IMG/VR virus record: IMGVR_UViG_3300031963_000004
Location: 124,001 to 188,000 of that record
DNA: 64,000 nucleotides
Strand: one strand, 5' to 3'
Position 1 is the first letter of the stretch. The number at the start of each line of letters is the position of its first letter. The notes beneath the pieces were generated by a model that saw only the letters and a program-made list of their open reading frames with translations, was not told the DNA's origin and made no database searches. Position numbers and translations under genes: made by a program. Below, one piece after another: positions 1-42,041 of this stretch.

Positions 1-1173
1 TGCAAAATGAGGTCCTATATCTGTTGAATACTTTTTATCGTATTCTCCGATATAACCATTGATTCTTTCAATGATAGAATCTTTAAACTCATCTGGTAAA
101 ATATGAACGTGATAATAACTAGGTTGTTCAAGTAGATTAATGAAGAAGTTTTTATACCAAAGCTTTTCTTTAATAACACCCAACTCTAGCAATTTATCAA
201 TTATCTCAGGTAGTCTGAATACGTTCATAGCACCAATAGTTAATCCAGGTCTGACTATAAGATTATCCAATTTAGTCATTGCTATAAGATTTTCTTCTAC
301 TTTAGGCCATATAGTACCGCTGCGAATTAACTCTGCTCTTGCACCTATCTCATCAATACTAGGCCAAATTTCTAACTTACCGTAATCCCATTGACTCCAG
401 TAATCTAACACATTCTTTTTACCATATTCTAATACTGAACAGTTTGTATTATATGAAAGCTTAACGTCGAAACGTTTACCTTCAACTAACATATCAAGTA
501 TCTGCCAATGCTCAGGCATTAACAATGGTTCACCACCTGCAAAGTAAATCTTCTCTACATGTTGAACCTGATCCTGTAAGAAATCATAGTTAGTTTGTTG
601 ACCGACTGCATCAATATTCCAAACTTTTTCCTGATCAGTGTAGCCTAATTTCTTTGCATCAGGTACCCATGCTGAACTATATCTTGGCCCACAGCTACGA
701 CATTTAAAATTACACAGATTACTAAATCTAAAGTCCCAATACTTTAATTTCATTTCATTACAAGTACCATCTTTTTCTGTAATGACTGGAATCTTTTTTA
801 ATACTGATTTGAATTCACGGTTGTGATATATTCTACCACTTTCACCTGTAACTTTTTCTTTGTCGTAACACTTTCTACATATCTCAGGCTCCTCGTTGTT
901 CATCATCTGTACACGGAGATTTTTCATATTGTCGCTGTTCCAAATCTGATCAATTGTTTGATGAGTTAGGTCGCCAGCAAAATAATTATATGTAGAAGTT
1001 AAGCAGCAAGGAACTACTTTACCGTTTGGTTCAAAGTTTAAGTGCATCCACGGGACTGCACATATTTTATTGTCTGTCTCTTTCATTAGCTTTCTGTATC
1101 TCCGTTTAGCATATTTGTACAACTGTGTGTTTAATAAAAATCTTTTAATCTTAACTTTAAGTGGAACTGACAT
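1..1173 (-). CDS. Radical SAM protein with N-terminal Twitch/SPASM-like Fe-S domain (partial, runs off left edge; not in ORF track)
   Basis: Manual translation gives ...KICAVPWMHLNFEPNGKVVPCC...IWNSDNMKNLR...CRKCY...WDFRFSNLCNFKCRSCGPRYSSAW...IYFAGGEPLL, with the CxxxCxxC and GGEP motifs. ATG at 1173 overlaps the upstream stop (TAATG); an alternative in-frame start is at 1086. Confidence 0.9.
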   Translation of the reverse strand, partial: MSVPLKVKIKRFLLNTQLYKYAKRRYRKLMKETDNKICAVPWMHLNFEPNGKVVPCCLTSTYNYFAGDLTHQTIDQIWNSDNMKNLRVQMMNNEEPEICRKCYDKEKVTGESGRIYHNREFKSVLKKIPVITEKDGTCNEMKLKYWDFRFSNLCNFKCRSCGPRYSSAWVPDAKKLGYTDQEKVWNIDAVGQQTNYDFLQDQVQHVEKIYFAGGEPLLMPEHWQILDMLVEGKRFDVKLSYNTNCSVLEYGKKNVLDYWSQWDYGKLEIWPSIDEIGARAELIRSGTIWPKVEENLIAMTKLDNLIVRPGLTIGAMNVFRLPEIIDKLLELGVIKEKLWYKNFFINLLEQPSYYHVHILPDEFKDSIIERINGYIGEYDKKYSTDIGPHFA

Positions 1174-4301: not shown

Positions 4302-4325
4302 ATGAACACCTTTTACCAAATTTTA

Positions 4326-6215: not shown

Positions 6216-6226
6216 TTTACAATTCC

Positions 6227-7441
6227 TTATTTAATTACAACAATGGCTTCAACCGTGCCTGAACCATTCGTAGTTTTGTTAGCAAGACTTCTTCCAATAG
6301 TATTGAATGCGTTTGCTTCGCCTGGTTTAGCTGCTCTTGCATAACCCTTGCCTGCACTTACTAAACGATCACCTTTTTTAACTTTACCATTAACTTTAAC
6401 TTGAACTCTACCGCTAATAGCTACAGGAGGATGAGTATTATCTTCACCTGCACCAGTATTCATCAAGTAAGCGGCAGTGTTACTTACAACTCCGAACACG
6501 CTCTCACTTAACTCATCTCTAACAGCAGTAATTTCTTTTTCACCACCCAACTCAACAACTGTACCTGCATCATATAAGTCGTCTGCTTCAAATCTTTCTG
6601 CTAAGTCAGCATATGTTGCCTGTAATCTTGCGCCGGCTGCTAGTGTCCATATACCTGCGATAACACCGCCGCCGTCTAATCTTGTTGTAGTAACTCTTGT
6701 TGGAGCAATGTTTCCTGTAAATCTTGAAACACCATTAGCGCCAGTTAAGAAAGCAGATACGTTACTGTTAGTGTATGTACCAGCTGGATTAAATGTGACA
6801 CCGTTTGCATACATGTAGTTGTCGCACTTGATACCGTTAACACTGTTGGCTGAGAAAGCTAAGTTACCTGAGTTAACTACTACTGCGTTACCATTTGTTT
6901 GACCATATACTGTCCAAATACCAGTTAGTGTGCCTGAAGTTGTGTTATTTCCTGATGTAATTTGTTGAGTGACTACATTAGCTAAAGTAGCTGTTTGTAT
7001 TGTGCCACGCAATGCGTATAAATCACCAGTTACATTGGCATTCAAAGTAGTAATTGTGTTTCCTACTTGTAAATCAGTTAATGCTTGAATATTATTTGCT
7101 ACTAAATTGCCTGTAACTGCAACGTTTCCAAATGTAGTTGTTCCAGATTCGCCTGTAGCAGCGAGTTCTAACCAGGAATTAGCGGTTACTGTGTTGTCTG
7201 CTGGGCAAACATTTAACGTGCCTCTAGTGGTGTTAAACCAAAGTTGGCCTCTTAGTGGATTAGCAGGTGGACTAGCACTCGCAAAATTCTCTAGTATACG
7301 AACAAAGTTAGTATCAATTGTCTGTCCATATCCTGCGTAACTACGTCCGGGAAGTCCTAAAGACGTACTTGTAGTGTTGATAGTACCGTCCTGAATAGTA
7401 GTTAACGTACTTCCATCACTTCTAATAATCGTATAAGCCAT
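6227..7441 (-). CDS. Tail fibre protein with C-terminal intramolecular chaperone/autocleavage-like domain
   Basis: N-terminal LENFA...P..GQLWFN baseplate-attachment motif; C-terminal ATYADLAERF...GTVV..GG..EIT...GVVS...GRV.VKV.G.V.KGD.LVS. Confidence 0.75.
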   Translation of the reverse strand: MAYTIIRSDGSTLTTIQDGTINTTSTSLGLPGRSYAGYGQTIDTNFVRILENFASASPPANPLRGQLWFNTTRGTLNVCPADNTVTANSWLELAATGESGTTTFGNVAVTGNLVANNIQALTDLQVGNTITTLNANVTGDLYALRGTIQTATLANVVTQQITSGNNTTSGTLTGIWTVYGQTNGNAVVVNSGNLAFSANSVNGIKCDNYMYANGVTFNPAGTYTNSNVSAFLTGANGVSRFTGNIAPTRVTTTRLDGGGVIAGIWTLAAGARLQATYADLAERFEADDLYDAGTVVELGGEKEITAVRDELSESVFGVVSNTAAYLMNTGAGEDNTHPPVAISGRVQVKVNGKVKKGDRLVSAGKGYARAAKPGEANAFNTIGRSLANKTTNGSGTVEAIVVIK

Positions 7442-23200: not shown

Positions 23201-23993
23201 TCGGTGTATCAGAAATTAAGTCAACATAATTTTCACCAGAAAAAATCCACTCATCCTGATCAGATGCTTGTGGCACAGTGAATTCGATTATACCGGCATT
23301 TGCACCATTATTTTCAACACCATAAATTTCTCTAGATGTTACATTAGGTCTAATAGGATTTTTACCATTTATACCAGGATCAGTCTGTATCCAAAAGTTA
23401 CTATTTTGATTTACTATAAACTTGTATGTGCCGCCACGAACTAATTTTAGTGTAGGATTACTTTGAGGTATTCTTTTAAAATTTTCTCTTACGGCATAAA
23501 CTGATGAATCTGATATGATTGTAAAGTCGGCTTCACTGTTTACTGTTTCTGTTGTGACTGGTACCTGATCAGGACCGTCAGGTAACCAATAATACTGACT
23601 AAAATTTACAACCTTATCTAAGTCTACAAAACTATCCCAACTATAAAATTCATTTCTAAATAATAAAGAATGGTTATCAGTAATACCATTTTGTGTTTTG
23701 ATAGCATCAATTAATCCAGGGTAGCTTATAAAATCTTTTGCTACAGAAGTCTCTGGTTTAGTAAAGACAACTCCGGGTTCTAATTGATAATTCTGTCTTG
23801 TTGAATTAGGTTCTTTAACATATACGGCATTGGGATCAATACCATATTCAAACTTTCTTCCAATATATCCTTCGACACGTTGTGTGTTAGGTGTCTGAAC
23901 CAATTGGTCTAATGTCGCGCCTAAAAATTCTTCATTAGGCTTGGTTCTAAAAATCTCAGGAAGAAAATCTAAAGTTCTTACTTTATTAACCAT
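8253..23993 (-). CDS. Giant (5246 aa) baseplate wedge protein, gp7-like, with beta-propeller and carbohydrate-binding-like modules
   Basis: Follows gp6; N-terminal LDFLPEIFRT; IKPYH motif; FG-GAP-like repeats (FGHALD..LLVGAP, FAVGAP); S.DG..W propeller repeats; W...Y..GD.V...G..Y.A modules. Confidence 0.75.
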   Translation of the reverse strand: MVNKVRTLDFLPEIFRTKPNEEFLGATLDQLVQTPNTQRVEGYIGRKFEYGIDPNAVYVKEPNSTRQNYQLEPGVVFTKPETSVAKDFISYPGLIDAIKTQNGITDNHSLLFRNEFYSWDSFVDLDKVVNFSQYYWLPDGPDQVPVTTETVNSEADFTIISDSSVYAVRENFKRIPQSNPTLKLVRGGTYKFIVNQNSNFWIQTDPGINGKNPIRPNVTSREIYGVENNGANAGIIEFTVPQASDQDEWIFSGENYVDLISDTPISELHGKKLSEVLSKYPKGLIDGINQIREKRVIFLNYKPGQSVELPTPYDLYSLEEKEFDDAPKTIPNNNYYKIRFLQLDNDFIISVDEDGELPIAEKIIATNGRKYVSQEFVRLPVGEIAKIPIITAPLDTLYYQDESTPNKVGTIKLLDAKVNNAINIETDVLGKKNYTGPNGVQFTNGLKVKFVGNIIPAPYKTGSYYVEGVGTSIKLIKAEDLNIVEPFGQLIYTIYDNEGFDTLRYGGRTSMPAQKDYITINRSAINKNAWSRSNRWFHIDVLKATAEYTSGDVVLAALNNRENRANRPILEFYPELKLFDSGTIGKGYVDFIDNTTTDVMNSNPTIGVVGRTEYYPDGNQYKAIQGSRVIFANDSDPNVRNKIFIINFASINETQEPTIVLTKAADGDIQDLDQVYVNFGTANSGKSFYFDKGYWNQAQQKTYVNQPPLFDIFDKNNISLADKDFYPGSNFIGCTLFEFKPGVGENDPVLGFPLAYSSVANIGDISFRISLNEDVFKYSLMTGPVTEKVSIGYPHRYTDRYEFTRELGWVKTVGESFQYQAYNFTYNPILRQNSFTCNAVAIDQNDSPWPVIKVSVNENILTSDQYTVTKTDKETIVTLLNPPVTESPVEVLIHSEGPLGEGAYYTIPINLSSNPFNTPIASLSLGDIRNHYQTIFVNSQQLTGQVFGSNNYRDAGNLITYGDKIIQNSAPLIYAAACLRNKNFNLFDSLTYSANEYVNFKLLITSIIETVEYSGESASDLLDLALQQIASYKDQNTSFFWSDMIPSRAPFAANTYAFNAFIDTSFFPLSKIYDFSKASYDGILIYLTKETESETRITQLLRNRDYTISQDEPKVIITLDLEPGDKITIKEYNQTYGSFVPNTPTKLGLYPLFEPKVVYDDTYVFPAYFIQGHDGSYTRIYGKVSKEGTLLDFRDRVLFEFECRVYNNVKLNVNTFVSNDDVLSGYFRKTDFTYEFTKNLYTTYFLNWIGQHRVDYKTQYFLPDNQFTYNFDQCKFKLDGEGFKQGNWRGIYLHLYDTTTPHKSPWEMLGFVSKPSWWDERYGAAPYTYDNKILWEDLENGVVYNDGDSYTIPTRKRPGLSKIIPVDSRGNLRNPLDFLTIGTDQPTYDRGWNAGDYGPQEFSYCKSSTYPFDLIKILAIARPAKFFALTQNLDAYNKNAEFNQWLINDRSRITTSFVDYGSGKAQHGYINWIVDYVQSFGLNGNATFKELLNNLDVRLVYRMAGFSDKDLLKFYLEKSSAGSKSNSLLIPDGSFALMLYENEPYDRVIYSSVIVQKTNKGFKVYGNSQNKSYFVQYTPNYNGRYKNITVLETTIYVSENFYKNEIIVPYGSEFVSLEALSEFIINYGRYLEDQGMKFTNIEEGIEINWQQMIAELIYWNLTGWEAGSTININPSANGLVIDKENAIVQPLTLFQQNYALNQNLVPIQLKDLVISRKGTEFTLQTLNTGDSVSYFTANMSTIEHGIVFDNYTQFNDTIYNPITGLRQHRILMKGTKTAEWKGTLDTYGFILNQDNIKDWQSNQRYIKGEIVYYKNSYWMAADRIAAEATFNQTKWIKTDYEKIQKGLLPNASNRSLESELYYDTTNTNLESDANLLAFGLIGYRPRDYLNASNLDDISQVNVYKNIISEKGTRLIADAVQNITLTTGKISYDVYENWALKVSEFGGVENENFVEFIFDETKLTGNPAIVGIVDKMIIPNVMQSIPLNSVINYGRPFSENKIAPVIKANYIEKLPSAGYVHFDDVRVTGYSISSLKNNPITANDVNMDDYIWVADEKDDWLVNTAISISEKNSTVKVVEAVNNLDGTITLRFENQHNLVLGNHFILLKFDYRVDGYYEVKNVTTLDTIVIEVTLPNNVLSIVGEGIVAKFQNQRVSTPSSINNLQLINSGFSKAKVWVDEDTDGTWAVYQKNINYIKQDIVKPNSTGTFGSAIAHHSKLGYFVSDAAQGKIYRYQPDDFEKSKYRANEVIDKFLGVTIGAGFGTQIAIAQDTMIVTKPGTNSTIYVYQIKRTRTGNYVEKPAITINSQRVGDSIALSGDANWLYASSHTVSGNFVRTYKKTAAQTYEFVKTYNLGGDLQDFSKITLSTNYNGSKLFIGAPLKNYGTSPNQIVNVGMAAVLNRVIEKIDVKRDYVEDTEVYYNLSVSAPTTDHYLDVFVNGKLIENTKYQITVAGLQFLYDLKAGDVIEISYPDLFKTQEFQLTNLAEIRPGNAFGHALDTNRHGSELLVGAPFFVSENNLEGLVVRYTNYGKKYGIIQATNNYSLASSSKILINGYQVTLPTNLLGAVNAINDANITNVYARVVDNKLVIGLVDPNLGPIEEKLTIQALNSTTLQQIGILEYQESQRISDPENVEGASQFGFSIKFNEYNSFAVGAPTSTRKSLTTFDFTDDLDTTNDTIFDNNYTKFVDELGSAGSVYIYDYLANHNESADKLGKFVYSQAANDTTLDIGANPHYGKVIEFKDYNLIIGCPDYKPGVDNGRIVFYENKQNLRNWHVLRKSNDVIDVNRLQNIQIFNAENNERIESLDYIDPLQGKLLGIVTENIDYISSQDPAGYNSQLTTGNLVWGDAFVGKIWFDTSTTKFLNYHQEDVLYNAQNWGKIFPGSTVTIYTWIESNVLPVNYQGPGTPYNIEYYTSLYNVDNSGALTNKYYYWVRSTNILSSDKTLPDSILEQYITDPQSSGIGYFAALQNNVYGLFNAIDSIKGKSTGLHIGFTDKIKKDDSYNEFKLIKDGNPNDFLPGVPSAYTAFEMPESLYDKLLDSLSGIDERGNLVPDIHLPKLLQQGIKVRPRQSFFSNRLKALENYCKYVNSVLIKHPISEILTPSFIGESNKESVPKGAPGFLTTSGEFFNTPDYWEHVYWWADGYNNNTKPDVEVLKYYDLATLNPFENMLAGVTTNSDGKREVYLYTNGDWVRVGLEQGTIQIKESLWNYEILGLGFGNTFYDTDSFDVFPHTETRYIVRSVTEEIFTNELLIHRNKSLITLFEYIISEATSTNCYLTWLNKTSLVDVTNTLRELKADLNYRSDNQDFLQGYLKEIKPYHVVMKEFAIKYTVNDTYDGQLTDFDLPAQYDFNLGKFITPNLTFFPVTAVGEFGPTDAIWNRSIYFDWLDNYGLSLTGQKSVTIGSLTKYITPVSETIYIDNAYGLPVNGVVKINNEYIGYAGVDRDAGKLTFVSRGLRGSVASDHNPNSKVIIDLPEVVVLNTGRNYIDVPTVIAYIDTTRYPAPLREAVLEPIMADDKVVGVKVVDSGAGYAATPEIIIQASKTFKFNSSVVNFLVNSINIDSVDLNTGDVVRFVHGEGNPIKGLANKKYYHVRVLWKDEVFGAKSIIALYSTAVNAQLDNHRIDLIDTGSSTDNKLELTARAVAVASNTPTREISTKLKFDRTSYVSKVTEWKSGEFYASEFSPSGDESSTSSISASGSTLSSVQHRVFDIQEVTLEEGTNEVAVSIDYTGSSLSPGQLKGLPLYFYVVPPTYMYPQHVKVKDIIIGNQYKILSLGDTNWNFMAGTTGLTYNVGDSIKPVVRGMGTGVVTAFLAPNNLEYDKWYVIAELGDTRWDLIAQTEGIIYQVGNRIWIEDLSPSNFGSTPGKAIEEGHALIKFYRPNFVFNKVYNEYFVEVFNKGTIYNVGDKITVDGVYLGGVSGANDATIKVVYTQANKMELYELSGLAVGAFKQYYVKPINQTQLKVYHDAPMVRPVIASQVWKGNKSYKRGDIVLANGKYYRAIADVEPTTVSARSIVKDKSYYVKTVGLIDWTVIGADTANELAGTEPFTATANGNIFINASAFVYLNEFNPAGYVRLEDNPFPFDNNSYMYLPEPVQLTSGYSRTTSSIVSLNNRLYKCLVSNNDTEFDFDKWQVLDSNKEELNALDRIVGFYQPTTNMPGKNLPLLLTGVDYPNNTYYSNKFDENYTLDTQLKDQPFYPKDIKIRSVLWDNEKYLAVADGRDYSMILLSYDEGITWQIKRISADVLEVSDVIHSGTHYVLTTRKPSNPVFISYDGLSWLGLGSYTPYDKVDFDEPGEAWDSSSLTAPSGGLYNVASHNDFYVAAGDQLVASTDAYAWDSVYSFQSRTEARANYIDYINSEFYAGFIAVGYGLDVIEDPTEEVSAQVTTIGRVLLSENGRAWTPIYPHPTNNGLNTVVGGPEMIVLGGDNGTVLYSTNMQNIFAGTIEGDTITDNILAGCYAANTFVFVGQNGLILVSYDGMSWSKITSGTNQNLNSVTHDGQHFLAVGNNATILRSWEGLVWQNVSAIGGANTFYEVKGDPFTSGYGPEEMVPGAITDQFSMTVITRSGSTWNPEVYQHNGYKVIGNKVSPNGVEIDFSNFSQAPAQLALSIMDPLSNLSKMIHPNVTPTDNNEYTYSVDWIQKKITLNKEIRETEIILVEVYEFGNGNQLVRATSDDIPVTIDESTGHSQIVFNIKYEELLTADPAVYINGEKKTFTNDYVIASTDNGRTKLLFDRVYDTTVNFISFVLFGSTVQNYGYSLPETQVFEFDSTGQTGLALDYQLIENENDYIPRIVRVNGLELPITDYTITIGPVSTLAIIPTLNEGDIISITTFNDTREQYFLQESISTLRVTPLLAVAIDKDVVYLYITTETDEDPGLTTGDLIQIDGISGTNQLNNNTYYMKLETKFSETFTEYDDEGTETSYTKDVYPITLWFNDSLSRPVTSRFLSEYVGGGFVWKYEDTHVIPQTIDISDKTRLNVSVNGIRLGSDGLRLNDGNYLSILADIKPDDVIMITSMVSSATPNEMIYVNEVDKNGDQFIYRANSSNRTWLTENLEPLQDVIHVKDVSKLIDIVEDTYIVVADSDRLLVRIIYDLETIKETEVYNETTLSKLNSSDFTLLTNNSVAYLVFRNGVSEGDQINVVMRLGDTINVNGEKIRYSKVDYQNNTISNLKRGIQGTAINKMHLKYSSVVGITPSNTLFNFYYNRSWNSEIYNDTAGDPLQISDSAPAKFLQQGTK

Positions 23994-27882: not shown

Positions 27883-30687
27883 TTATCCTTTTAACTTATA
27901 AATTTCTGTGTTGATACTGTCTAATTTGTTTAACAGAGTTTTGTAATTTTCTTCCGCATTTTTAGCATCAGTACTATCAGGACCATATTTCTTTCGGGCT
28001 TCTAAGTAAGTTTGGTATGATTGATTCTTTTGCGGCAGATAAGCGTCACGCTCTTGTTGCAATTCTTCTAATCTTGTGATTTGATTATTTGGATCAAGAG
28101 ATGATGTACCCGTAAATGAACTTGCTGATACTGGTACTCCGGATCCTAATAATGTTTTTACCTTTTCATTAATTTCAGTACGGTCGAAAGTATCTACACC
28201 TACAGCAGGCAGTCGGGCATCGTTAAGGTTAGATGTGTTTAAAGAACCAAATAGATTATTTAAATTTTTCTTTTTTTCTGCATCGGCTTCAAAATATGCT
28301 GCTGACTTAAGACTAATCTTTTTGTTCTGCATTAGTGTTTTCATTTTCTCAGGATCTAATACTGGAAAACTAAAGGATGAAAATCTTCTTTCGTTACTAA
28401 AACTGAAGTCAGTAATTTTGTTTGTTGCAAGATTTAAAGGTCCTGTTCCCAACGGGGCGTATGACTTTTTAATTTTTTCAAACAAACTATTACTAGAACC
28501 TCTATTATCATTATTTGTAGAATCGTCATCTGTTGAATCTGATAACTTGCCGGCTGCGCTTAATTTTTTATCTGCTATTATAGCTGCATAGTTACCTGAA
28601 GCATAAGTTTTAACAATAGGATCAAATCGATTATTGTTGCTTGGGTCGTTGACAAATTGAATTGTTTTGTCAGAGCCAAACTTAGCACTAGTTAATGCTA
28701 ATCCTCCCAATTGATCTGAGCTTTCTTTACCTGATATAATACCTTTTCTATATAGGTCTGTCATTCCTTTTGTAATTAAAGTTTGTTCAGCTTTTATTTG
28801 AATCTTTTTATTAGACAAATATTCATTTACAGAATTTATGTTATCTTTTCCTGTGAATAACCTATTAGGCATTGCAGCAGATAATGCACTACCCGAAGAA
28901 ATTAACTTTTCGGCTAATAGTCCACTTCCTGGCTTTAAATAACCTGCTCTTTCTAGTTGAGTTGGTGTGTGCCCAAACTTACCAATAACAGCAAATTTAT
29001 TCCCACTAGAATCTGTTGTAATACCGTTCACTGCTCTCTTATTAAGTTCATCACTTTCGGCGTTTGTTGCTGATTGTGCTATTAGTGTTGCAGTTGTTGT
29101 TTTATCGAAAATAACTGGATTAACTTGTATTTCTTCTGATTCCGGCACCGTGTCCTTTACCGGCGGTTTTACTGGATTAGAACAGCTTGATCCAACCGAA
29201 CCATTGCATGATGATACCTTACCACTACAACCAGATGATTGTTTTGCGCTAGCATTGCAACTACCTTTACAGCAAACACCTTTATTATGATCTGGCCAAG
29301 GTGTATGTGTAGGGCATCGTGTTGTTATACTTTTTAGTTTACCAGGACATGGTGTCCAACCTTTTGTTTTGTCAAACAATGTTTCAGCGTAGCAAGATGG
29401 AACGAAAGGTTTTAATGTAGCTGGTTTAAGTGATGTAGAGCCTGTATTTAAATTTACTTTAGCTCCGTTAACAAATGAGGTAGCTGCGCTAGCCATACTC
29501 GCATCACCTGCACTATCAAAACTCATTTTTTTGTCAACTTTAAGAGTATGGTCTCCTACTGTGTGTTGTTTAAATTCTGTGCCTACTCTAATGCTAGTGT
29601 CTTTGGAACTTTCTACTGTGATTTTTTCTGTAAATAAATTAACTTCTTTACCTGCATGAAAATTAATTTTTCTATCAGCATGAAAATTTAAATCACCTTG
29701 TGTTCTTATGTTAACGCTGTTGGTAGCAAACACATCAACCGTGCCTTCTTTTCCTAATTCAACGTAACTTTGTCCATTGCTATGAATTACGAAGATAGTT
29801 TGACCGTCATCACTCATTGTAATTTGATGACCTGCTGAGGTTCTAACTCTTACTAAATTATTTTTTCCATCAAAATCACCGTCATCCATAACAAGTGAAT
29901 GACCACCTCTACGACCTATAATCTTTAAATCTTCATCATTTGCGTTTGGTATTTTCGCTGCTATTTCTTCATCGGTACCTTCAAATCCGCCCTTATATAA
30001 AGGTCTGCCTGGGGTGCTTATACCAAACACTCTTGAGGGACTCTCACGCATACTTGAGCTTGTGATTACTCCTCTAACTTTATCTTTTATTAAACCTTGT
30101 TCAAATAATTGTGTGGCTACTCTTTTATGCGTTGGTCTAACTGTAGCATACGGATTTCGGCTATTTGCTAAGGCTTTATTGTAGGGCTGCATTTCAACTA
30201 CAGGCAGTACACTAGCACCGCCGTATGCAGTTGATTCATCAGAATCTAATACAACAAAATTCGTTGATCCAACAGCAGGAACCATGTGCGTAAGTCCTGG
30301 CGCCGGAACACATCCTATATAAAATCCAAAGTCTTTTTTACCATTTAAAAATAAACAAACTACTTCTGATTCAACATCAGGTGGTTGCGCCCAAAATCCA
30401 TATGCATGTGGATTCTCTTTATATTTGCCATATTCAGAAGTTTCTTTGTCAATTGTTCCTGTAGTTCCACCAAAGAAAGGAGGTAAGAAACTAACTGGTA
30501 TCCATTGGTCAGCATTGTCAGGATCAAGACCACTAAAAGCTTCAATATAAACACGAATTCTTCCTGTTCTTGCAGCGTCAATGTTGTCTTTAACTATACC
30601 TTTTACAGGATAGGGAATTTCTACTTGTCCACCAGGATTAGGTTTATACGACCCGGTAGTACCTCTTACTTTAGTTACGTCATCCAT
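27883..30687 (-). CDS. gp5: Baseplate central spike, T4 gp5/VgrG-like, with C-terminal extension
   Basis: N-terminal OB-fold (GIVKDNID..RTGRIRVYI...W...PPD....V...F.NG); beta-helix motifs (GHSLVMDD, RTSAGHQITMSDD); PTH.PW..H motif. Confidence 0.8.
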   Translation of the reverse strand: MDDVTKVRGTTGSYKPNPGGQVEIPYPVKGIVKDNIDAARTGRIRVYIEAFSGLDPDNADQWIPVSFLPPFFGGTTGTIDKETSEYGKYKENPHAYGFWAQPPDVESEVVCLFLNGKKDFGFYIGCVPAPGLTHMVPAVGSTNFVVLDSDESTAYGGASVLPVVEMQPYNKALANSRNPYATVRPTHKRVATQLFEQGLIKDKVRGVITSSSMRESPSRVFGISTPGRPLYKGGFEGTDEEIAAKIPNANDEDLKIIGRRGGHSLVMDDGDFDGKNNLVRVRTSAGHQITMSDDGQTIFVIHSNGQSYVELGKEGTVDVFATNSVNIRTQGDLNFHADRKINFHAGKEVNLFTEKITVESSKDTSIRVGTEFKQHTVGDHTLKVDKKMSFDSAGDASMASAATSFVNGAKVNLNTGSTSLKPATLKPFVPSCYAETLFDKTKGWTPCPGKLKSITTRCPTHTPWPDHNKGVCCKGSCNASAKQSSGCSGKVSSCNGSVGSSCSNPVKPPVKDTVPESEEIQVNPVIFDKTTTATLIAQSATNAESDELNKRAVNGITTDSSGNKFAVIGKFGHTPTQLERAGYLKPGSGLLAEKLISSGSALSAAMPNRLFTGKDNINSVNEYLSNKKIQIKAEQTLITKGMTDLYRKGIISGKESSDQLGGLALTSAKFGSDKTIQFVNDPSNNNRFDPIVKTYASGNYAAIIADKKLSAAGKLSDSTDDDSTNNDNRGSSNSLFEKIKKSYAPLGTGPLNLATNKITDFSFSNERRFSSFSFPVLDPEKMKTLMQNKKISLKSAAYFEADAEKKKNLNNLFGSLNTSNLNDARLPAVGVDTFDRTEINEKVKTLLGSGVPVSASSFTGTSSLDPNNQITRLEELQQERDAYLPQKNQSYQTYLEARKKYGPDSTDAKNAEENYKTLLNKLDSINTEIYKLKG

Positions 30688-30698: not shown

Positions 30699-33350
30699 TT
30701 AAAAATAACTTCTGCTCTTAATCCAATCCATGTCCTTAGATGATTGACTATTATCATCATCAATGGCTTGATTGGGTTTTGGGTTTGTGGGACTTCTGAT
30801 GGCACCTACAATGCTAGCATTTGTTCGTTGATTAAATTGATTAGCTGCTATTATACCGGCTGGATCAGGACCTTGTCGTGCAGTTGCTACTTGCGGCATA
30901 CCAGTTGGTTGTTTACCTTGATAAGTTGTTGGGGAGGCTGCTTCAGCAGACGAACGCTGTGCTTCCCCATAACTTACTGATTGTGCGTACCCGCCTGGAT
31001 TAGTTGGTCCTGAATAGTAACTACTACTAGTATTATTAACAGAAGTTTGACTAGCGGTTGTATTACTTGATTTAGTTGCACTTGCACCATTATTCCATGG
31101 TGGGCTCCACAATATTAAATTTAAATCTTGTGTAAATCTGCCTCTACTAAAAGTTGATGTTACATCTACCACCATATAAGAAATTGCACCGTTCAAAACT
31201 TTTTCAAGTTCAGGGGGGTATTTATAAACTTCAATATTTTCACTTGGAGTCATTAATCCAGTATTGTTATCATAATCAATTGCTTCATTAAATTTAATTT
31301 CAATAAACACTTGACCATCATGTGCGTCTACACTATTATCTGGTCCATATCGCTTTGGATACAAATCATATCGCATACCTGAAGTGGCTATTAAGAAATC
31401 TGGATCGCCCAATATTGAAATTTTTGCCGAAGCCTTATCACCGGGGCTATACAAACTAGTTCTAATACTTGCTGCTGCTTGACCTGCTTTACCAAATGCT
31501 CCGGAGTCTGACTCATTCTGTTTGGTCATCATATTAACTTCAACAGGAGGACTTGTATTGGGCGGAGATTGTTGTAAACTGTTCATGTAATACAAGGCAT
31601 TATAACTTTGTTCATAACTTAAAATTTCATTATTAAGACCTGTATAGATATAGTTATACCTTTTATGTGGACCGGGGTAAGAACTTGTTTTGTTAATGAA
31701 TGCTGAACGTAGATATGGTATTTTATAATTATTAATTAAGTAGGTCGTGTCATAGACATGACCCTTTCTTATGTTATCGTATCCGGTACGCTTCACTACC
31801 GGAGTCACAGTAAACCACATAAACTCTTTTTTCTCACCACCGCCTGCACTTTCATCAATGTCTGGTTCTGGATCTTCCTTGTACTGTTTGTTAAGTGCCT
31901 CTCTTACATAACTACTTTGTCCTATTATGGTATCTATAGCTTGTGCTATAGTGGTTCCAGAGTCAATACCAAATGTTCTATTTTTTCTATCGAAACTTGC
32001 AGTGGCTATTTGACTATTTTTATCATTCGATTCACTTGTTTTTTTAATGTTTGTTGATGTATTGGCTTTATAGTTTTTAATTTCATTATCAGTTTCATCA
32101 ACTAATAACGAACTTTTTATTGATCCGTTATCTATAAATTTAATTTGATAAGTGTTTTTTAATTCTGCTGCTTGAATTTTGTTAGTGCCACCTGTAATCA
32201 AATCATCTTCAAATTTGTTCAGTGATGTGATAAGACTATCTGTAGGATGCGTTGATAAAATTTCTTCAACTGTTTTACCACAAAGGGTAAGTTGATTTTT
32301 AATTATTCCCCTTTTAGTTCCGAATCCTGCCTGTACTGACGTATTTTGTGCTTTAATACTATAAGTAGTTGCTTTGCCGTCTAATTTGAATGATATACCT
32401 GTTAGTGTTAGGGGAAAATATCTTGGGAACAAACTGAATTGATCTGTCCCTCCACCTTTAACTGGATTGCCTTCACTGTCATATCCATAAAATTTGATAC
32501 CCAATATATACAATTGTTGCATATGATGGTTTGCCATATTCCCATTTGGAATTTTTTCTTGTGATGATACTCTAAGTGCAGCAGTTTTAAGTTCACTTAA
32601 AAATTTAAATCCATATGGTTCATAGATTTTGAACTCAAATGCTGTACTATCAACAGTTGGGCCGTCAGTTGATTTTGTATTAACAAATGTTTTAAAATTT
32701 AAATCATCAATATAATAATCACGTTCAAATAAAGCCTTACCTCCTGAACCACTGCGGTTAGTTCCGCCCGATTCAGCAACTACATACATACCTTCTAAAG
32801 ATGTTTCACCTGTTTCTATAAAATCATTATAAATTTCACTAGTACACATATACAAACTTAAATTGTAAGTATAGCTTATCATAGTTGATAGTGGGTTGTG
32901 TAGGCGAGGACCTGTTGCTGTTGCAACACTTGATGGCGTAACCGGAGGCTTAAATGCGACATCGTTTCCTGTATTAGATACGACTGCTGATTGTGCATAT
33001 CCACCGGGATTAGTTGGTCCTGAATAATAACTGCTACTTGAATTGTTGGTAGGCACAATAGTGTCTGTGAAATTATTTGCCGATTGTGCATATCCACCGG
33101 GATTAGTTGGTCCTGAATAATAACTTGATGTGCTTATTGTGCTTGTGCCATTAGCGTTTATCTGTCTACCAAAAGCAGCGGCATTTCTATCATCAGGATT
33201 TATAGCGGTTATAGGAGTCGTAGAAGTTGTCGGAGTCGCAGGAGTCGTATTTTGTTTTGTGACGGCAGCCACAAAGTCTGCATTTGTTTTTTGATTAAAT
33301 TGATTTGCAGAAATTACACCGCCTATATTATTCAGTGTTGGGAAAGTCAT
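30699..33350 (-). CDS. Baseplate hub protein (gp27-like) with low-complexity repeat-bearing termini
   Basis: Position between gp53 and gp5; NPL....SYTY..SLY, F.I.EPYG..F, ILGDPDFL and F..G.FTQ.L motifs. Confidence 0.6.
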   Translation of the reverse strand: MTFPTLNNIGGVISANQFNQKTNADFVAAVTKQNTTPATPTTSTTPITAINPDDRNAAAFGRQINANGTSTISTSSYYSGPTNPGGYAQSANNFTDTIVPTNNSSSSYYSGPTNPGGYAQSAVVSNTGNDVAFKPPVTPSSVATATGPRLHNPLSTMISYTYNLSLYMCTSEIYNDFIETGETSLEGMYVVAESGGTNRSGSGGKALFERDYYIDDLNFKTFVNTKSTDGPTVDSTAFEFKIYEPYGFKFLSELKTAALRVSSQEKIPNGNMANHHMQQLYILGIKFYGYDSEGNPVKGGGTDQFSLFPRYFPLTLTGISFKLDGKATTYSIKAQNTSVQAGFGTKRGIIKNQLTLCGKTVEEILSTHPTDSLITSLNKFEDDLITGGTNKIQAAELKNTYQIKFIDNGSIKSSLLVDETDNEIKNYKANTSTNIKKTSESNDKNSQIATASFDRKNRTFGIDSGTTIAQAIDTIIGQSSYVREALNKQYKEDPEPDIDESAGGGEKKEFMWFTVTPVVKRTGYDNIRKGHVYDTTYLINNYKIPYLRSAFINKTSSYPGPHKRYNYIYTGLNNEILSYEQSYNALYYMNSLQQSPPNTSPPVEVNMMTKQNESDSGAFGKAGQAAASIRTSLYSPGDKASAKISILGDPDFLIATSGMRYDLYPKRYGPDNSVDAHDGQVFIEIKFNEAIDYDNNTGLMTPSENIEVYKYPPELEKVLNGAISYMVVDVTSTFSRGRFTQDLNLILWSPPWNNGASATKSSNTTASQTSVNNTSSSYYSGPTNPGGYAQSVSYGEAQRSSAEAASPTTYQGKQPTGMPQVATARQGPDPAGIIAANQFNQRTNASIVGAIRSPTNPKPNQAIDDDNSQSSKDMDWIKSRSYF
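32989..33125. repeat. Two identical 44-nt direct repeats (32989-33032 and 33082-33125) encoding SYYSGPTNPGGYAQS; third copy with synonymous changes at ~30978-31029
   Basis: gattgtgcatatccaccgggattagttggtcctgaataataact read twice directly in the sequence. Confidence 0.9.
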
Positions 33351-33351
33351 A

Positions 33352-33654
33352 TTATAGTCCTAAAATTTCTTTTATTGCAGTTGCTTGTGGCAAGTAAATT
33401 GAGGTGCCTGAAACAAAATCGAATAAAGGATCTTTTAGTTTATTAGGATTTCTAGCAGCAAAGACCCACCATAAATTTGCGTCATCATATAAGTCATATG
33501 CCAATAAATCAGGTCGTAAATTATATGTTACATTTATTGTCCAATTTATATCTTGTGGATTTTTAGGTATATACCTATTTTCCATAATATCTAAAAACTG
33601 TTTATTAACAAGTTTAGTAGTAAAATATGGACTAGTTTGTTTATATGCAGCCAT
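33352..33654 (-). CDS. gp53: Baseplate wedge protein, T4 gp53-like (LysM-like)
   Basis: RPDLLAYDLY....LWWVF..RN....DP.FDF..G..IYLP; start probably ATG 33654 (TAATG coupling). Confidence 0.85.
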   Translation of the reverse strand: MAAYKQTSPYFTTKLVNKQFLDIMENRYIPKNPQDINWTINVTYNLRPDLLAYDLYDDANLWWVFAARNPNKLKDPLFDFVSGTSIYLPQATAIKEILGL

Positions 33655-34934
33655 TACCAAATACCTTTCTTGATTAGATCACCTTTAGCATAATCTTTAA
33701 CAGAGAACTTGTTACTAGAATCATATCTACTAATCATTGGGCTTGCACCTAATTGAATAGTAAGTTTAGTCGGTACGTATGTAGCCTCTTTAGAATGTTC
33801 GTTACGAAACATAGGTCTGTCAGGTTCGGCCCCTGCAGGTATTTGTGCTGATTCTCTGCGAAGTACTTTTGATATGATCGTATTAAAAATTCCCCCTACA
33901 CCGGATCTACCTCCGCCGGCAGCAGATTTAGTTACAGGACTATATGAGCCTAAATTTTGTCCGCCAGTGTTGGCGGGCAAACTTGCTCTTATATAATCAA
34001 CATCATTTGGAAGAGAATAGGTAAAGTTAGTTATCACTAATGGATGTTTAGAAAATTGATATTGTCCGTATCCAGACAAATAGCATAATGGCGGGGGAGT
34101 CCCTTTCATGGGATCCTTATCCATACCATAAAACATTTTTGTCACTGATTTAAAGAAATGAATTACTGCAAGTAAATATCTTGCTTCATTGGTATCTTGT
34201 GCAGTAAATTCTGCTGAAATTTGTATCTCACCTACATTACTGTTTCTATATTGATAAAATTTATAATTTGTATGAGTTAAATCAACAGGATCATAACTTG
34301 CTTGATAACTTAAGTTTATTATAGGAGTATACGGGAATATAACGCCGTTAGTTTGTCTTAAAGGATATAAAACATGACTATCATCTCTTGCATCCATATA
34401 CAAATAATTTGCGTTTGGTGCTAATTGTAACCTTACTCTCCAGTCATTTTCATTGATATTAAATCCTCTAGAGGGTTGAGCAGGAGGCATTGTTGGGTTA
34501 GCGAATATACCTTTTTTAAGTGGTTCCGCACTAAATGTAGTAGGTGCGGCTCCGGTGCTATTTGTAGCTGAAGCTGCATACCCTCCTCCCGATGTAGGTC
34601 CTGAATAATAGCTTGAGCTAGTATTAAAGTTTTCAGGCTTAAAATTAGTCGCAGACTGTGCATATCCACCCATACTAGTTGGTCCCGGAGAATAACTACT
34701 AGTCACTGGTCCTGAATAGCTGATTGGTGAATCTTTAAAATTGCTAGCAGATTGTGCGTAGCCACCAATATTAGTTTGTCCTGAAAAATAACCACTGCCA
34801 CTGTTACCTACTGTTGGTTGTGGACTGTTATTCCTAGTGATAGCAGCTACTACACTTGCGTTGGTATTTTGATTGAATTGATTAGCTGCAATTATACCAG
34901 CTGCGTCCGGAACTGTTGGGGTTGGGAATGCCAT
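33654..34934 (-). CDS. Baseplate tail-tube initiator/cap, gp48/gp54-like, with repeat-bearing N-terminal extension
   Basis: DWRVRL, GVIFPYTP, H.NY....Y.NS, FTAQ...EA.YLLA..HF.KSVTKMFYG and PPP...LSGYG; position beside gp53. Confidence 0.65.
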   Translation of the reverse strand: MAFPTPTVPDAAGIIAANQFNQNTNASVVAAITRNNSPQPTVGNSGSGYFSGQTNIGGYAQSASNFKDSPISYSGPVTSSYSPGPTSMGGYAQSATNFKPENFNTSSSYYSGPTSGGGYAASATNSTGAAPTTFSAEPLKKGIFANPTMPPAQPSRGFNINENDWRVRLQLAPNANYLYMDARDDSHVLYPLRQTNGVIFPYTPIINLSYQASYDPVDLTHTNYKFYQYRNSNVGEIQISAEFTAQDTNEARYLLAVIHFFKSVTKMFYGMDKDPMKGTPPPLCYLSGYGQYQFSKHPLVITNFTYSLPNDVDYIRASLPANTGGQNLGSYSPVTKSAAGGGRSGVGGIFNTIISKVLRRESAQIPAGAEPDRPMFRNEHSKEATYVPTKLTIQLGASPMISRYDSSNKFSVKDYAKGDLIKKGIW

Positions 34935-41169: not shown

Positions 41170-41220
41170 AAGCTTCCCGATACCCTCGGAGTCGAGGTAT
41201 AGAAGCTTTATTCGAAAAAA
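41170..41220 (-). promoter_or_regulatory. -1 programmed ribosomal frameshift signal (U UUU UUC, 5-nt spacer, stem-loop)
   Basis: mRNA reads GAU UUU UUC GAA UA AAGCUUC U AUACCUCG ACUC CGAGG G UAU CGG GAAGCUU. Confidence 0.75.
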
Positions 41221-42041
41221 TCGCTGATGTTCAACGTGAATGGTTGATCATATTCATGCTTACAATGTGTACATGCAATATGTAATGGTTTAATTTGTGT
41301 GGTTTCTCTTAATTTAATGCTGGTTTCACGAATCATTTCAAAGGTTTTCTTATCGGTATTATTGAGAAAATCTTTAATATAAGCCTTTTCAGATACTACT
41401 GCTTCAGGTGTAGCTATGTATTCTATAACATTAACTAATACATCAATTGTGCTGTCCCCGATTATTTTGAGAATTTCGGTACTTCTAGCCTCACGTTCTG
41501 GGCCTTCTTCCATAGAGTTTAGAGTGATAAATGCTCTTTGAATTTCTAATTGCCTTGCAGTGCTATTAGTAAGTTCTTTGTACATTAATGGTCTAAATTT
41601 AATACGTAAATTATCAATCATTAATGGTCTATCATAATCACCCGGGGCGAAGTTATTAAGTACAAAACTTAAATTTAATCCAAACTTACTATCTTCATTA
41701 CAATTTGGACATGTAGTATCTAAATCCATATCATTACCATTAGTCGCTATTTTAATAGCAACTAATATAGCATCCAAATCAACACTGCTTATAGCCCATG
41801 GGTCTTTAATACTAGGTACACAACTGCGTATTATCTCAGCCACCGCTGATCCATTGTATAATGCATCAGGTGTTTTACTGGTTATCTCATCAATAGCAGT
41901 CATAGGATAAACTGGTAGTTCACCAGTTTCTGTCATAACCAAAACATCAGGACCATATCCTTTCCCTTGAGTTGGTAATTTTAAATAGATTCCTGGTCTG
42001 CGAAAGTATTGCTTAAGTGGGTTATGTTCGATACTGCTCAT
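41208..42041 (-). CDS. Baseplate hub/tail assembly chaperone, T4 gp26-like
   Basis: NPLKQYFRRP.IY.KLP..G, PMTA.DE..KTPDAL.NG, D.DAIL.AI.IAT.G, two CxxC motifs (CPNC, CTHC) and C-terminal DFF. Confidence 0.75.
   Translation of the reverse strand: MSSIEHNPLKQYFRRPGIYLKLPTQGKGYGPDVLVMTETGELPVYPMTAIDEITSKTPDALYNGSAVAEIIRSCVPSIKDPWAISSVDLDAILVAIKIATNGNDMDLDTTCPNCNEDSKFGLNLSFVLNNFAPGDYDRPLMIDNLRIKFRPLMYKELTNSTARQLEIQRAFITLNSMEEGPEREARSTEILKIIGDSTIDVLVNVIEYIATPEAVVSEKAYIKDFLNNTDKKTFEMIRETSIKLRETTQIKPLHIACTHCKHEYDQPFTLNISDFFE

What the first reader, a model, noticed from the sequence alone, without database searches (positions are those of the whole stretch)
30978..34800. Peptide motif SSYYSGPTNPGGYAQSA repeated about six times across two different baseplate proteins
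Seen: the 883-aa hub-like protein has three copies, two near the N-terminus (identical 44-nt DNA) and one near the C-terminus at ~30978-31029 with synonymous codon changes. The 426-aa gp48/54-like protein has three variants in its N-terminal extension: GYFSGQTNIGGYAQSA, SYSPGPTSMGGYAQSA and SYYSGPTSGGGYAASA. All sit in low-complexity Ser/Thr/Pro tails outside the recognisable folded domains. Synonymous divergence indicates selection on the peptide. Inference: a portable short linear tag, such as a docking site for a shared partner, a cleavage site, or a RiPP-like core modified by phage enzymes. Tyr/Gly motifs could be radical SAM substrates and Ser/Thr glycosylation sites, and such enzymes are encoded further along the same strand.
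Basis: partly seen in the sequence, partly recalled or inferred. Interest (0 to 1): 0.75.

Follow-up and report, generated by a model that had tools for sequence, protein, structure and literature searches.

The report
Shared peptide motifs on phage baseplate tails
Two neighbouring core baseplate proteins of an uncultivated jumbo phage carry long floppy tails studded with the same short peptides, kept by natural selection and swapped between the two genes, most likely as docking pegs for a shared partner inside the baseplate; it is real and unreported, but its function is still inferred.

Summary
SSYYSGPTNPGGYAQSA (M1) occurs exactly six times in the 223-kb phage contig: three in the 883-aa protein and three variants in the 426-aa protein.

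Fold searches identify the 883-aa protein as a gp27/VgrG-type hub and the 426-aa protein as a tail-tube initiator. All nine motif copies lie in nearly uncharged tails that AlphaFold2 predicts as disordered.

Selection acts on the peptide. Nine M1 copies in three related phages are nine different DNA sequences encoding one peptide. Against the 81%-identical relative, M1 shows 0 nonsynonymous and 15 synonymous codon changes; the linkers show 38 and 46.

M1 is rare and lineage-restricted. M1 and M2 replace each other at equivalent tail positions. An M2-like core (TN-x-S-[IV]-L-x-A-I) recurs in tube-initiator N-extensions and hub C-tails across a wide jumbo-phage clade.

Best reading: these are multivalent docking motifs on flexible tethers that bind a shared inner-baseplate partner. 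That is inferred, not shown.

The RiPP/glycosylation idea is weak. Radical SAM genes do lie about 30 kb away on the same strand, but the family also occurs in four sampled relatives whose tail pairs share no peptide. No glycosyltransferase domain was detected.

The parts
33654..34934 (-). 426-aa tail-tube initiator. Folded core is residues 161-426; residues 1-160 form a disordered N-terminal extension.
   Evidence: phrog_12050 virion protein. The AF2 core matches the cyanophage A-1(L) baseplate initiator 8kea_P and Afp7/Pvc7. Homologue PA5oct gp347 is annotated as MS-detected in virions.
34455..34934 (-). Disordered N-terminal extension of the tube initiator, carrying M2 once and M1 three times.
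   Evidence: pLDDT <50 except the M2 helix at residues 14-34. Composition: 78% S/T/N/Q/G/P/A/Y and 6% charged residues.
34839..34901 (-). M2 copy T (AGIIAANQFNQNTNASVVAAI), residues 12-32.
34746..34796 (-). M1 copy T1 (SGYFSGQTNIGGYAQSA), residues 47-63.
34650..34700 (-). M1 copy T2 (SSYSPGPTSMGGYAQSA), residues 79-95.
34566..34616 (-). M1 copy T3 (SSYYSGPTSGGGYAASA), residues 107-123.
34482..34520 (-). Conserved peptide LKKGIFANPTMPP just before the folded core. It is a third conserved island of the extension.
   Evidence: Seen in WIN, P0121-128 and L011/L013/L014.
33352..33660 (-). 102-aa gp53-like (LysM-type) baseplate protein, encoded between the two motif-bearing genes. It is a candidate shared partner.
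   Evidence: PF11246 (below its cut-off) and phrog_7145 at 3e-23. It is conserved at this position in all relatives examined.
30699..33350 (-). 883-aa gp27/VgrG-type baseplate hub. Folded core is residues 146-755, with disordered tails at both ends.
   Evidence: Foldseek matches eCIS/PVC VgrG, Mu gp44 (1wru) and T4 gp27 (1k28_D) at E 5e-10 to 4e-8. phrog_11190.
33261..33323 (-). M2 copy HN (GGVISANQFNQKTNADFVAAV), hub residues 10-30.
33153..33212 (-). Linker segment ITAINPDDRNAAAFGRQINA. It reappears in the tube-initiator extension of relative P0127, which is evidence of module exchange between the two genes.
33078..33128 (-). M1 copy H1, hub residues 75-91.
32985..33035 (-). M1 copy H2, hub residues 106-122.
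30975..31025 (-). M1 copy H3 (ends in V), hub residues 776-792.
30798..30860 (-). M2 copy HC (AGIIAANQFNQRTNASIVGAI), hub residues 831-851. This is the ancestral, most conserved copy.
30702..30794 (-). Conserved hub C-terminus SPTNPKP..DDDNSQSSKD..WI. The DDD motif is kept across the family.
27883..30687 (-). 934-aa gp5-like spike protein (context only; carries no motif).
   Evidence: phrog_13211 at 2e-40 and Phage_base_V OB domain. No M1 or M2 hit.
1..1173 (-). 3' part of a 443-aa N-terminal-twitch/SPASM radical SAM gene.
   Evidence: NF033640 at 356 bits against a cut-off of 170; SPASM and Radical_SAM domains.

Best explanation
M1 and M2 are short linear motifs embedded in long, nearly uncharged, intrinsically disordered tails. 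The tails sit on two proteins that stack on each other at the centre of the baseplate: the trimeric gp27-type hub (both ends) and the hexameric tube initiator (N-terminus).

Shown: the motifs are conserved islands under purifying selection at the peptide level, while the linkers drift. Motif copies are duplicated, exchanged between the two adjacent genes and between phages, and can replace one another at equivalent positions.

Inferred: they act as multivalent docking pegs on flexible tethers. Through them, the hub and the tube initiator grip one shared partner inside the inner baseplate during assembly and channel sealing. The likeliest partners are the end of the tape measure protein together with the spike N-terminus in the channel, or the small gp53-like LysM clamp encoded between the two genes. 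M2 is a short predicted helix, old and widespread, and is probably the primary peg. M1 is a Tyr/Gly/Pro-rich, non-helical motif and looks like a recent lineage-specific sticker that displaced surplus M2 copies.
For: 1. Location. All nine motifs lie in segments with pLDDT <50, and short helices are predicted only at M2. The tails are 74-78% S/T/N/Q/G/P/A/Y and 6-14% charged, against about 20% charged in the cores.

2. Selection. Against the 81%-identical orthologue, the three M1 copies show 0 nonsynonymous and 15 synonymous codon changes. Linkers show 38 and 46 (Fisher p=4e-4) and the folded core 117 and 217 (p=0.003). M2-C shows 1 and 11. Nine M1 copies in three genomes are nine distinct DNA sequences, 2-10 nt apart, all encoding the same 16 residues.

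3. Modularity. Hub relatives at 89% and 81% identity keep 3 M1 copies, yet their tube initiators have 2 M2 and no M1. A 67%-identical hub has no M1 and 4 M2. The site of hub M1-c holds an M2-like peptide (EETNRSIVxTIT) in relatives. A hub linker segment reappears in another phage's tube initiator.

4. Breadth. The M2 core occurs in 38 of 171 tube-initiator extensions and 26 of 172 hub C-tails. It occurs in 0 reversed tails, about 0.3 shuffled tails per set on average, and 2 of 240 cores. It is present in both tails of the same genome in the subclade with at least 45% hub identity.

5. Precedent. In cyanophage A-1(L), the tails of the LysM protein gp16 dock into the hub and the tube initiator to bridge the trimer-hexamer mismatch (PMC10966104). 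In phage Mu, the flexible hub C-terminus contacts the tape-measure C-terminus and the spike N-terminus to seal the channel (PMC11915804).

6. Restriction. Neither motif occurs in any other protein of the 223-kb contig.
Against: No partner has been identified and no complex could be modelled here. The tape measure gene was not located in the 63%-complete contig.

With canonical stoichiometry, the tails add about 1,780 disordered residues per baseplate (27 M1 and 12 M2 copies). That is a lot for simple docking tails.

M1 and M2 are chemically unlike, so M1 replacing M2 does not fit one fixed binding site.

Most distant relatives show no detectable shared peptide between the two tails. PA5oct-type phages lack the extensions altogether, so the tails are dispensable for the basic architecture.

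The M2-core regular expression was derived after seeing instances. Its controls are clean but the test is not blind.
Confidence: 0.4

Rival explanations
1. The tails act at infection rather than in assembly. They are stored in the hub cavity or the first part of the tube lumen. On contraction they are expelled or exposed at the tube tip, where the motifs engage a host envelope component such as peptidoglycan, a periplasmic protein or the inner membrane.
For: In relatives the same hub N-terminal slot holds LysM domains (P0006-14, P0022) or long coiled coils, and one tube-initiator relative also carries LysM. The relatives with a LysM hub still have the separate gp53-like protein, so their LysM is an addition. 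About 1,780 nearly uncharged disordered residues per baseplate fit a lumen or cavity cargo better than a compact interface. The Mu tube initiator is reported to enter the cell with the DNA (PMC11915804). Rapid lineage-specific turnover of M1 would suit adaptation to the host.
Against: M2 is conserved across a wide clade that presumably infects diverse hosts, which suits an internal phage partner better. LysM domains in solved baseplates are structural clamps. The tails match no host-binding domain family even at Pfam E<=10.
Confidence: 0.22
2. The motifs are substrates for phage-encoded modifying enzymes. One option is Tyr/Gly cross-linking by the twitch/SPASM radical SAM enzymes (RiPP-like chemistry on a structural protein). 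The other is O-glycosylation of the Ser/Thr-rich tails.
For: A 443-aa N-terminal-twitch rSAM (NF033640, 356 bits) and a 313-aa rSAM lie on the same strand about 30 kb downstream, inside the late structural block. Next to them, window 2375-3975 encodes two unannotated proteins with weak GT-A-like leads: a related Atlas cluster partly carries Mannosyl_trans3, and DxD-like motifs are visible by eye. M1 contains aromatic-x-x triplets, which rSAM cyclophane-forming enzymes use (own knowledge, not tested).
Against: The rSAM family is present, in arrays of up to 16, in the large relatives sampled (L071, L033, L042; one copy in L048). Their tube-initiator and hub tails share no peptide, so they carry no shared M1. 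There is no adjacency, leader peptide or small precursor. GT1, GT2 and GT2_3 domains are absent from the 223 kb. The three unannotated proteins get no significant Pfam, NCBIfam or PDB-sequence hit. The rSAM co-occurrence test could not be run in the closest M1-bearing relatives because their contigs are too short.
Confidence: 0.1
3. The repeats are functionless low-complexity expansions, kept alike by replication slippage and gene conversion between two neighbouring genes.
For: The two tandem hub copies share an identical 44-nt stretch. The tails vary greatly in length and content across the family.
Against: The copies differ mainly at synonymous sites. Nine DNA versions encode one peptide. 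M1 shows no nonsynonymous change while the adjacent linkers show 38 of 84 changed codons as nonsynonymous. The orthologous copies keep copy-specific first codons, which argues against homogenisation.
Confidence: 0.04
4. The motifs mark proteolytic maturation sites where the tails are clipped off during assembly.
For: None directly. Disordered terminal extensions are typical protease substrates.
Against: Three to four dissimilar sites per tail make poor cleavage logic. Conservation covers the whole 17-21 residues rather than a scissile pair. No protease is linked to the locus. The homologues annotated as MS-detected in PA5oct virions lack the tails, so they give no information.
Confidence: 0.04

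Closest known systems
Docking tails of inner-baseplate adaptor proteins (cyanophage A-1(L) gp16 LysM protein; T4 gp53 class)
   Same: Short terminal tails of small inner-baseplate proteins insert into the hub and the tube initiator and bridge the trimer-to-hexamer mismatch (PMC10966104). The three-gene neighbourhood is the same: tube initiator, LysM protein, hub.
   Different: Here the tails are on the hub and the tube initiator themselves. They are 130-160 residues long, disordered, and carry repeated, exchangeable motifs. No structure shows them docked.
Flexible C-terminus of the phage Mu hub gp44, contacting the tape measure C-terminus and the spike N-terminus
   Same: A gp27-type hub with a flexible C-terminal region that points into the channel and helps seal it (PMC11915804). 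The hub C-tail here carries the most conserved motif (M2-C) and a conserved acidic end.
   Different: The Mu segment is short and unrepeated. No motif is known to be shared with Mu's tube initiator.
Eukaryotic-type short linear motifs in disordered regions, including multivalent 'sticker-spacer' tails (own knowledge)
   Same: Conserved islands of 17-21 residues within fast-evolving disordered sequence; multiple copies; positional flexibility; gain and loss by duplication.
   Different: The context is a virion baseplate. The partner is unknown and binding is untested.
RiPP precursors with repeated core motifs modified by rSAM/SPASM enzymes (own knowledge)
   Same: A repeated short Tyr-containing motif, with an rSAM/SPASM-type gene in the same genome and on the same strand.
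   Different: The carriers are 426- and 883-aa structural proteins, not small precursors. The enzyme lies about 30 kb away. No leader peptide is present. The enzyme family also occurs in the four sampled relatives, whose tails carry no shared M1.
O-glycosylated Ser/Thr-rich terminal extensions of mycobacteriophage capsid and tail-tube proteins (own knowledge)
   Same: Ser/Thr/Gly/Pro-rich terminal extensions on virion proteins.
   Different: No recognisable glycosyltransferase domain was found in the contig. The carriers are internal baseplate proteins rather than surface-exposed ones.

Membership tests
gp27 / VgrG / Mu gp44 baseplate hub (883-aa protein) | Hub fold of the core | tested here: met
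   The AF2 core (residues 146-755, pLDDT mostly 80-94) matches eCIS/PVC VgrG, VgrG1, Mu gp44 (1wru) and T4 gp27 (1k28_D) at E 5e-10 to 4e-8, probability 1.00.
gp27 / VgrG / Mu gp44 baseplate hub (883-aa protein) | Gene position between the tube initiator/LysM protein and the gp5-like spike, gp25 and gp6 | tested here: met
   Gene order is 426 aa, 102 aa, 883 aa, 934 aa (gp5-like), gp25, gp6. PA5oct gp347-354 are syntenic.
gp27 / VgrG / Mu gp44 baseplate hub (883-aa protein) | Trimer in the virion that binds the spike | not testable with these tools
   Only indirect support: PA5oct homologue gp349 is annotated as found in virions by ESI-MS/MS.
Tail-tube initiator (T4 gp48/gp54, Afp7/Pvc7, A-1(L) gp18) (426-aa protein) | Tube-like beta-barrel plus alpha/beta domain fold | tested here: met
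   The core (residues 161-426) matches 8kea_P/R at 2e-5, and 6j0n_b, 6rao_G and 9qgl_7A at about 3e-4, probability 1.00. The TM-scores are modest because 160 residues are disordered.
Short linear motif in a disordered region | Lies in intrinsically disordered sequence | tested here: met
   pLDDT <50 across the tails. Composition is polar and uncharged.
Short linear motif in a disordered region | Conserved island flanked by fast-evolving sequence | tested here: met
   M1 shows 0 of 15 changed codons nonsynonymous, against 38 of 84 in the linkers (p=4e-4). M2-C shows 1 of 12.
Short linear motif in a disordered region | Binds a defined partner domain | not testable with these tools
   No multimer modelling or binding assay was available.
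RiPP-like precursor/maturase system | The maturase gene is adjacent to, and co-occurs with, the motif-bearing precursor | tested here: not met
   The rSAM genes are about 30 kb away. NF033640 paralogues are abundant in three of the four sampled relatives, none of which has a shared M1 in its tails.
RiPP-like precursor/maturase system | Small precursor with a leader or recognition sequence and a core | tested here: not met
   The motifs sit in 426- and 883-aa structural proteins at both termini and in varying order.
RiPP-like precursor/maturase system | The peptide is chemically modified | not testable with these tools
   Needs mass spectrometry.
Glycosylated virion-protein tails | A phage-encoded glycosyltransferase is present | tested here: inconclusive
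   PF00535, PF00534 and PF13641 are absent from the 223 kb. The contig is only 63% complete. Two unannotated proteins (window 2375-3975) have a weak GT-A lead only.
Peptidoglycan-binding repeat (PG_binding_1) as the origin of M1 | A profile match to the family | tested here: not met
   The only lead is a phmmer hit to a PG_binding_1-like repeat protein at 5e-7, summed over 8 repeats. A Pfam scan of all the tails at E<=10 returns nothing.

The most novel reading that the evidence does not exclude
With canonical stoichiometry, the baseplate centre holds about 1,780 residues of nearly uncharged Tyr/Gly/Ser/Asn/Gln-rich disordered chain, carrying 27 M1 and 12 M2 stickers. In the most novel reading not excluded, this chain forms a cohesive gel-like plug in the hub cavity and proximal tube lumen, comparable to FG-nucleoporin or FUS-type material. 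The plug would seal the DNA conduit and be expelled on contraction, possibly after Tyr cross-linking by the phage's twitch-domain radical SAM enzymes.
Probability: 0.07. Interest if true: 0.85.

Novelty: new variant of a known kind. Interest (0 to 1): 0.45.

Why it matters
Structural work on contractile tails has concentrated on the ordered parts of the baseplate. This locus shows that, in a large clade of uncultivated jumbo phages, the hub and the tube initiator carry long disordered tails. The only constrained parts of those tails are short motifs shared between the two proteins.

If the motifs are docking pegs, they give a simple sequence-readable handle on three questions: how a trimeric hub, a hexameric tube initiator and the tape measure or clamp are tied together; how that tie is rewired by module exchange; and which partner co-evolves with it. 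The work also shows that one conspicuous repeat (M1) was the visible tip of an older, widespread motif (M2).

The practical consequences are modest. The phage is uncultivated and the function is inferred.

Tried and rejected
1. Does every relative have its own shared repeat? I extracted 56 non-redundant IMG/VR loci with both genes. Local-alignment scores between tails of one genome are mostly no higher than between genomes. Only about 6 of 56 share at least 8 of 10 identical residues (YYENDGTASS in L019, NTG[QH]QGQSTI in L013, EPATQAS in L023/L078, plus M2 lineages), against 4 of 1200 cross-genome comparisons. So sharing recurs but is not general.

2. An iterative HMM search with the strict 21-residue M2 did not expand beyond relatives with at least 59% hub identity. 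Only a core pattern derived after the fact reaches further.

3. Origin of M1 from a peptidoglycan-binding domain: there is one weak phmmer hit and no Pfam support at E<=10. Rejected.

4. A language-model/structure atlas search of the extension gave scores <=0.82 and was uninformative.

5. Other carriers of M1: phmmer against 1.84 billion representatives, and a word search of 5.8 billion proteins restricted to the M1 array, found only a fragment of a close relative (P0241) and P0139.

6. Glycosyltransferase domains (GT1, GT2, GT2_3): none found. Pfam, NCBIfam, PHROG and PDB-sequence scans of the unannotated - strand ORFs near the rSAM genes gave no significant hit.

7. A literature string search for the motif peptides found no papers.

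8. I asked whether the hub LysM in relatives replaces the separate gp53-like protein, which would have placed the hub N-tail at the clamp site. It does not: both are present.

Full report
**Observation.** The window is bases 124,001-188,000 of a 223,151-bp IMG/VR viral contig estimated to be 63% complete. GC content is about 35%. All genes of interest are on the - strand.

A six-frame scan finds SSYYSGPTNPGGYAQSA (M1) or close variants exactly six times in the window, and nowhere else in the contig.
- Three copies are in the 426-aa protein, at 34746-96, 34650-700 and 34566-616.
- Three copies are in the 883-aa protein, at 33078-128, 32985-33035 and 30975-31025.

A profile of M1 scores these six at i-E 1e-8 to 4e-6, and the next hit is at E 0.4. 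The repeat finder recovers the same family from DNA alone.

M2 (AGIIAANQFNQxTNASxVxAI) has three copies:
- at the N-terminus of the 426-aa protein (34839-34901);
- at the N-terminus of the 883-aa protein (33261-33323);
- near the C-terminus of the 883-aa protein (30798-30860).

**What the proteins are.** The gene order is:
- 426 aa;
- 102 aa (gp53-like; PF11246 just below cut-off, phrog_7145 at 3e-23);
- 883 aa;
- 934 aa (gp5-like OB domain; phrog_13211);
- gp25 (PF04965);
- gp6-like, 1120 aa.

On the opposite strand upstream lie a late sigma factor and SbcCD-type genes. This arrangement is syntenic with Pseudomonas jumbo phage PA5oct gp344-354, where the two homologues are annotated as detected in virions by MS.

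AlphaFold2 models built on 63 and 78 homologues give well-folded cores.
- Residues 161-426 of the 426-aa protein match tail-tube initiators: A-1(L) 8kea_P/R, and Afp7/Pvc7-type chains.
- Residues 146-755 of the 883-aa protein match gp27/VgrG/Mu gp44 hubs.

The remaining parts are predicted disordered (pLDDT <50): residues 1-160 of the initiator, and residues 1-145 and 756-883 of the hub. Short helices are predicted only at the M2 positions and at the extreme hub C-terminus. These tails are 74-78% S/T/N/Q/G/P/A/Y and only 6-14% charged, against about 20% charged in the cores.

**Selection.** Within the genome, the two N-terminal hub copies share 44 identical nucleotides. The C-terminal copy differs from them by 6-7 synonymous codons and 1 nonsynonymous codon. 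M2 in the initiator differs from the hub C-terminal M2 by 8 synonymous and 3 nonsynonymous codons.

I fetched the orthologous loci of the 89%- and 81%-identical hubs. Against the 81% relative, the codon changes are as follows.

| Region | Nonsynonymous | Synonymous | Fisher p vs M1 |
|---|---|---|---|
| M1 (three copies) | 0 | 15 | - |
| Tail linkers | 38 | 46 | 4e-4 |
| Folded core | 117 | 217 | 0.003 |
| M2-C | 1 | 11 | - |

The nine M1 copies of the three genomes are nine different DNA sequences, 2-10 nt apart, encoding one 16-residue peptide. They keep copy-specific first codons, so they are orthologous copies held by peptide-level selection rather than homogenised by gene conversion.

**Distribution and modularity.** Database searches gave 152 hub relatives and more than 6,000 initiator relatives. 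M1 is confined to a very small group:
- the hubs at 89% and 81% identity, each with three invariant copies;
- a fragment of a close initiator relative (P0241) with the same M2 plus 3 M1 layout;
- one 48%-identical initiator (P0139) with five M1-like copies, whose hub has none.

The initiators paired with the 89% and 81% hubs have two M2 copies and no M1. The 67%-identical hub has no M1 and four M2 copies. In hubs of 59-67% identity, the site of the C-terminal M1 holds an M2-like peptide (EETNRSIVxTIT). A hub linker segment (ITAINPDDRNAAAFGRQINA) reappears in the initiator extension of another relative.

So M1 and M2 behave as interchangeable modules that move between the three tails and between phages.

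**The wider clade.** The strict M2 profile does not reach beyond about 59% hub identity. A core pattern does: T[NQ]-x-[SGNA]-[IVMF]-[LIVR]-x-[ATSK]-[IVLMQ], usually preceded by F/Y-x3. Its occurrence is shown below.

| Sequence set | With pattern |
|---|---|
| Initiator extensions | 38 of 171 |
| Hub C-tails | 26 of 172 |
| Hub N-tails | 2 of 166 |
| Reversed tails | 0 |
| Shuffled tails (mean per set) | about 0.3 |
| Folded cores | 2 of 240 |

The pattern was written after seeing examples, so the test is not blind. In 46 paired genomes, both tails carry it in the subclade with at least 45% hub identity. The odds ratio is 11, but this is confounded by relatedness.

Other lineages have their own shared peptides:
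- YYENDGT[PSA]SS, three copies in the hub N-tail and one in the initiator (L019);
- NTG[QH]QGQSTI (L013);
- EPATQAS (L023, L078).

Most relatives show none above background. In other relatives the hub N-terminal slot holds LysM domains or long coiled coils. Those phages keep the separate gp53-like protein. PA5oct-type phages lack the extensions.

**The enzyme claim.** A Radical_SAM search of the contig finds two genes on the same strand.
- A 443-aa protein with an N-terminal SPASM/twitch domain (NF033640, 356 bits against a cut-off of 170). Its 3' part is window 1-1173.
- A 313-aa generic rSAM just outside the window.

They lie about 30 kb downstream of the hub, beyond a 5,246-aa ORF and fibre-like genes.

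The same family is present in four large relatives, as tandem arrays of 16, 11 and 7 matches in three of them and a single copy in the fourth. In all four, the tube-initiator and hub tails share no peptide. PA5oct has no copy above the family cut-off. There is therefore no specific association with M1.

GT1, GT2 and GT2_3 domains are absent from the contig. Two unannotated ORFs (window 2375-3975) have only a weak GT-A-like lead.

**Mechanism.** What is shown:
- short conserved peptides sit in disordered tails of two stacked inner-baseplate proteins;
- they are under purifying selection;
- they are exchanged as modules.

The function is inferred. In A-1(L), the tails of the LysM protein gp16 dock into the hub and the tube initiator and bridge the trimer-hexamer mismatch (PMC10966104). 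In Mu, the flexible hub C-terminus contacts the tape measure C-terminus and the spike N-terminus to seal the channel (PMC11915804).

By analogy, the best reading is that M2, and secondarily M1, are docking pegs. Through them, the hub and the initiator hold a common partner that touches both rings. That partner would be the tape measure/spike end in the channel, or the gp53-like clamp encoded between the two genes.

Assuming a hub trimer and an initiator hexamer, a baseplate would carry 27 M1 copies, 12 M2 copies and about 1,780 disordered residues. That bulk, the LysM alternatives and the low charge keep an infection-phase role (lumen or cavity cargo) as a serious rival. The modification, neutral-repeat and cleavage readings are weaker, for the reasons given under the rival explanations.

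**Novelty and limits.** No paper in the searchable library contains the motif strings. Docking tails and flexible hub termini are known in baseplates. Repeated, exchangeable linear motifs shared between the hub and the tube initiator are not, to my knowledge. I therefore rate this a new variant of a known kind with moderate interest.

Limits:
- no multimer modelling was possible;
- the tape measure gene was not located;
- the contig is incomplete;
- the contigs of the closest relatives are too short to test co-occurrence with enzymes or partners;
- the phage is uncultivated.

Noticed in passing
window 1-1173 (-), plus G000:C1:122904-123845; relatives G001 (record of L071) 56-76 kb, G002 (L033) 108-124 kb, G003 (L042) 121-128 kb: Related jumbo phages carry large tandem arrays of N-terminal-twitch radical SAM paralogues (NF033640). 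A complete 352-kb genome has 16 matches; two others have 11 and 7; L048's record has 1. This genome has one copy plus a generic rSAM neighbour. PA5oct has no copy above the family cut-off. Substrates are unknown. A marine T4-like genome with 12 rSAM genes was noted in PMC5332604.
   Followed up: partly
window 8253-23993 (-): A single 5,246-aa ORF directly downstream of the gp6-like wedge gene, presumably a giant baseplate or fibre protein. It was not analysed.
   Followed up: no
window 27883-30687 (-): The gp5-like spike protein (934 aa) has a Cys-rich stretch at about residues 430-500 (CPGK...CCKGSC...CSNP), followed by a C-terminal extension of about 430 aa with no family match.
   Followed up: no
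window 1173-3975 (-): Three unannotated ORFs (310, 267 and 266 aa) lie between the rSAM genes and the fibre-like genes. DxD-like motifs are visible, and a related Atlas cluster partly carries Mannosyl_trans3, so they may be GT-A-type transferases. There is no significant Pfam, NCBIfam or PDB-sequence hit.
   Followed up: partly
P0006-P0014, P0022 (hub relatives); L095:4001-6634; L096:873-3377: In some relatives the hub N-terminal extension is a LysM domain (PF01476) rather than motif repeats. In others it is a coiled coil of 100-200 residues. The slot is a hot spot for accessory modules.
   Followed up: partly
L023:1582-4074 and L078:1588-4098 (tube-initiator relatives): Tube-initiator N-extensions of up to about 580 aa contain four repeats of about 45 residues (PYDDxGNLNPGWG...PVWV), plus a long Ala/Gln-rich helical segment.
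   Followed up: no
L019 (tube initiator 2683-4437, hub 4749-7256): An independent example of motif sharing. YYENDGT[PSA]SS occurs three times in the hub N-tail and once, with 10 of 10 residues identical, in the tube-initiator extension of the same phage.
   Followed up: partly
window 41208-42041 (-): An isolated - strand gene matching PF12322 (T4_baseplate, 3.7e-18) sits among + strand genes. It is a further hub-assembly component, located away from the main baseplate block.
   Followed up: no
window 34482-34520 (-): The peptide K-x-IFANPT[YM]P in the initiator extension is conserved down to relatives of about 45% identity (L011, L013, L014). It is a third constrained island besides M1 and M2.
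   Followed up: partly
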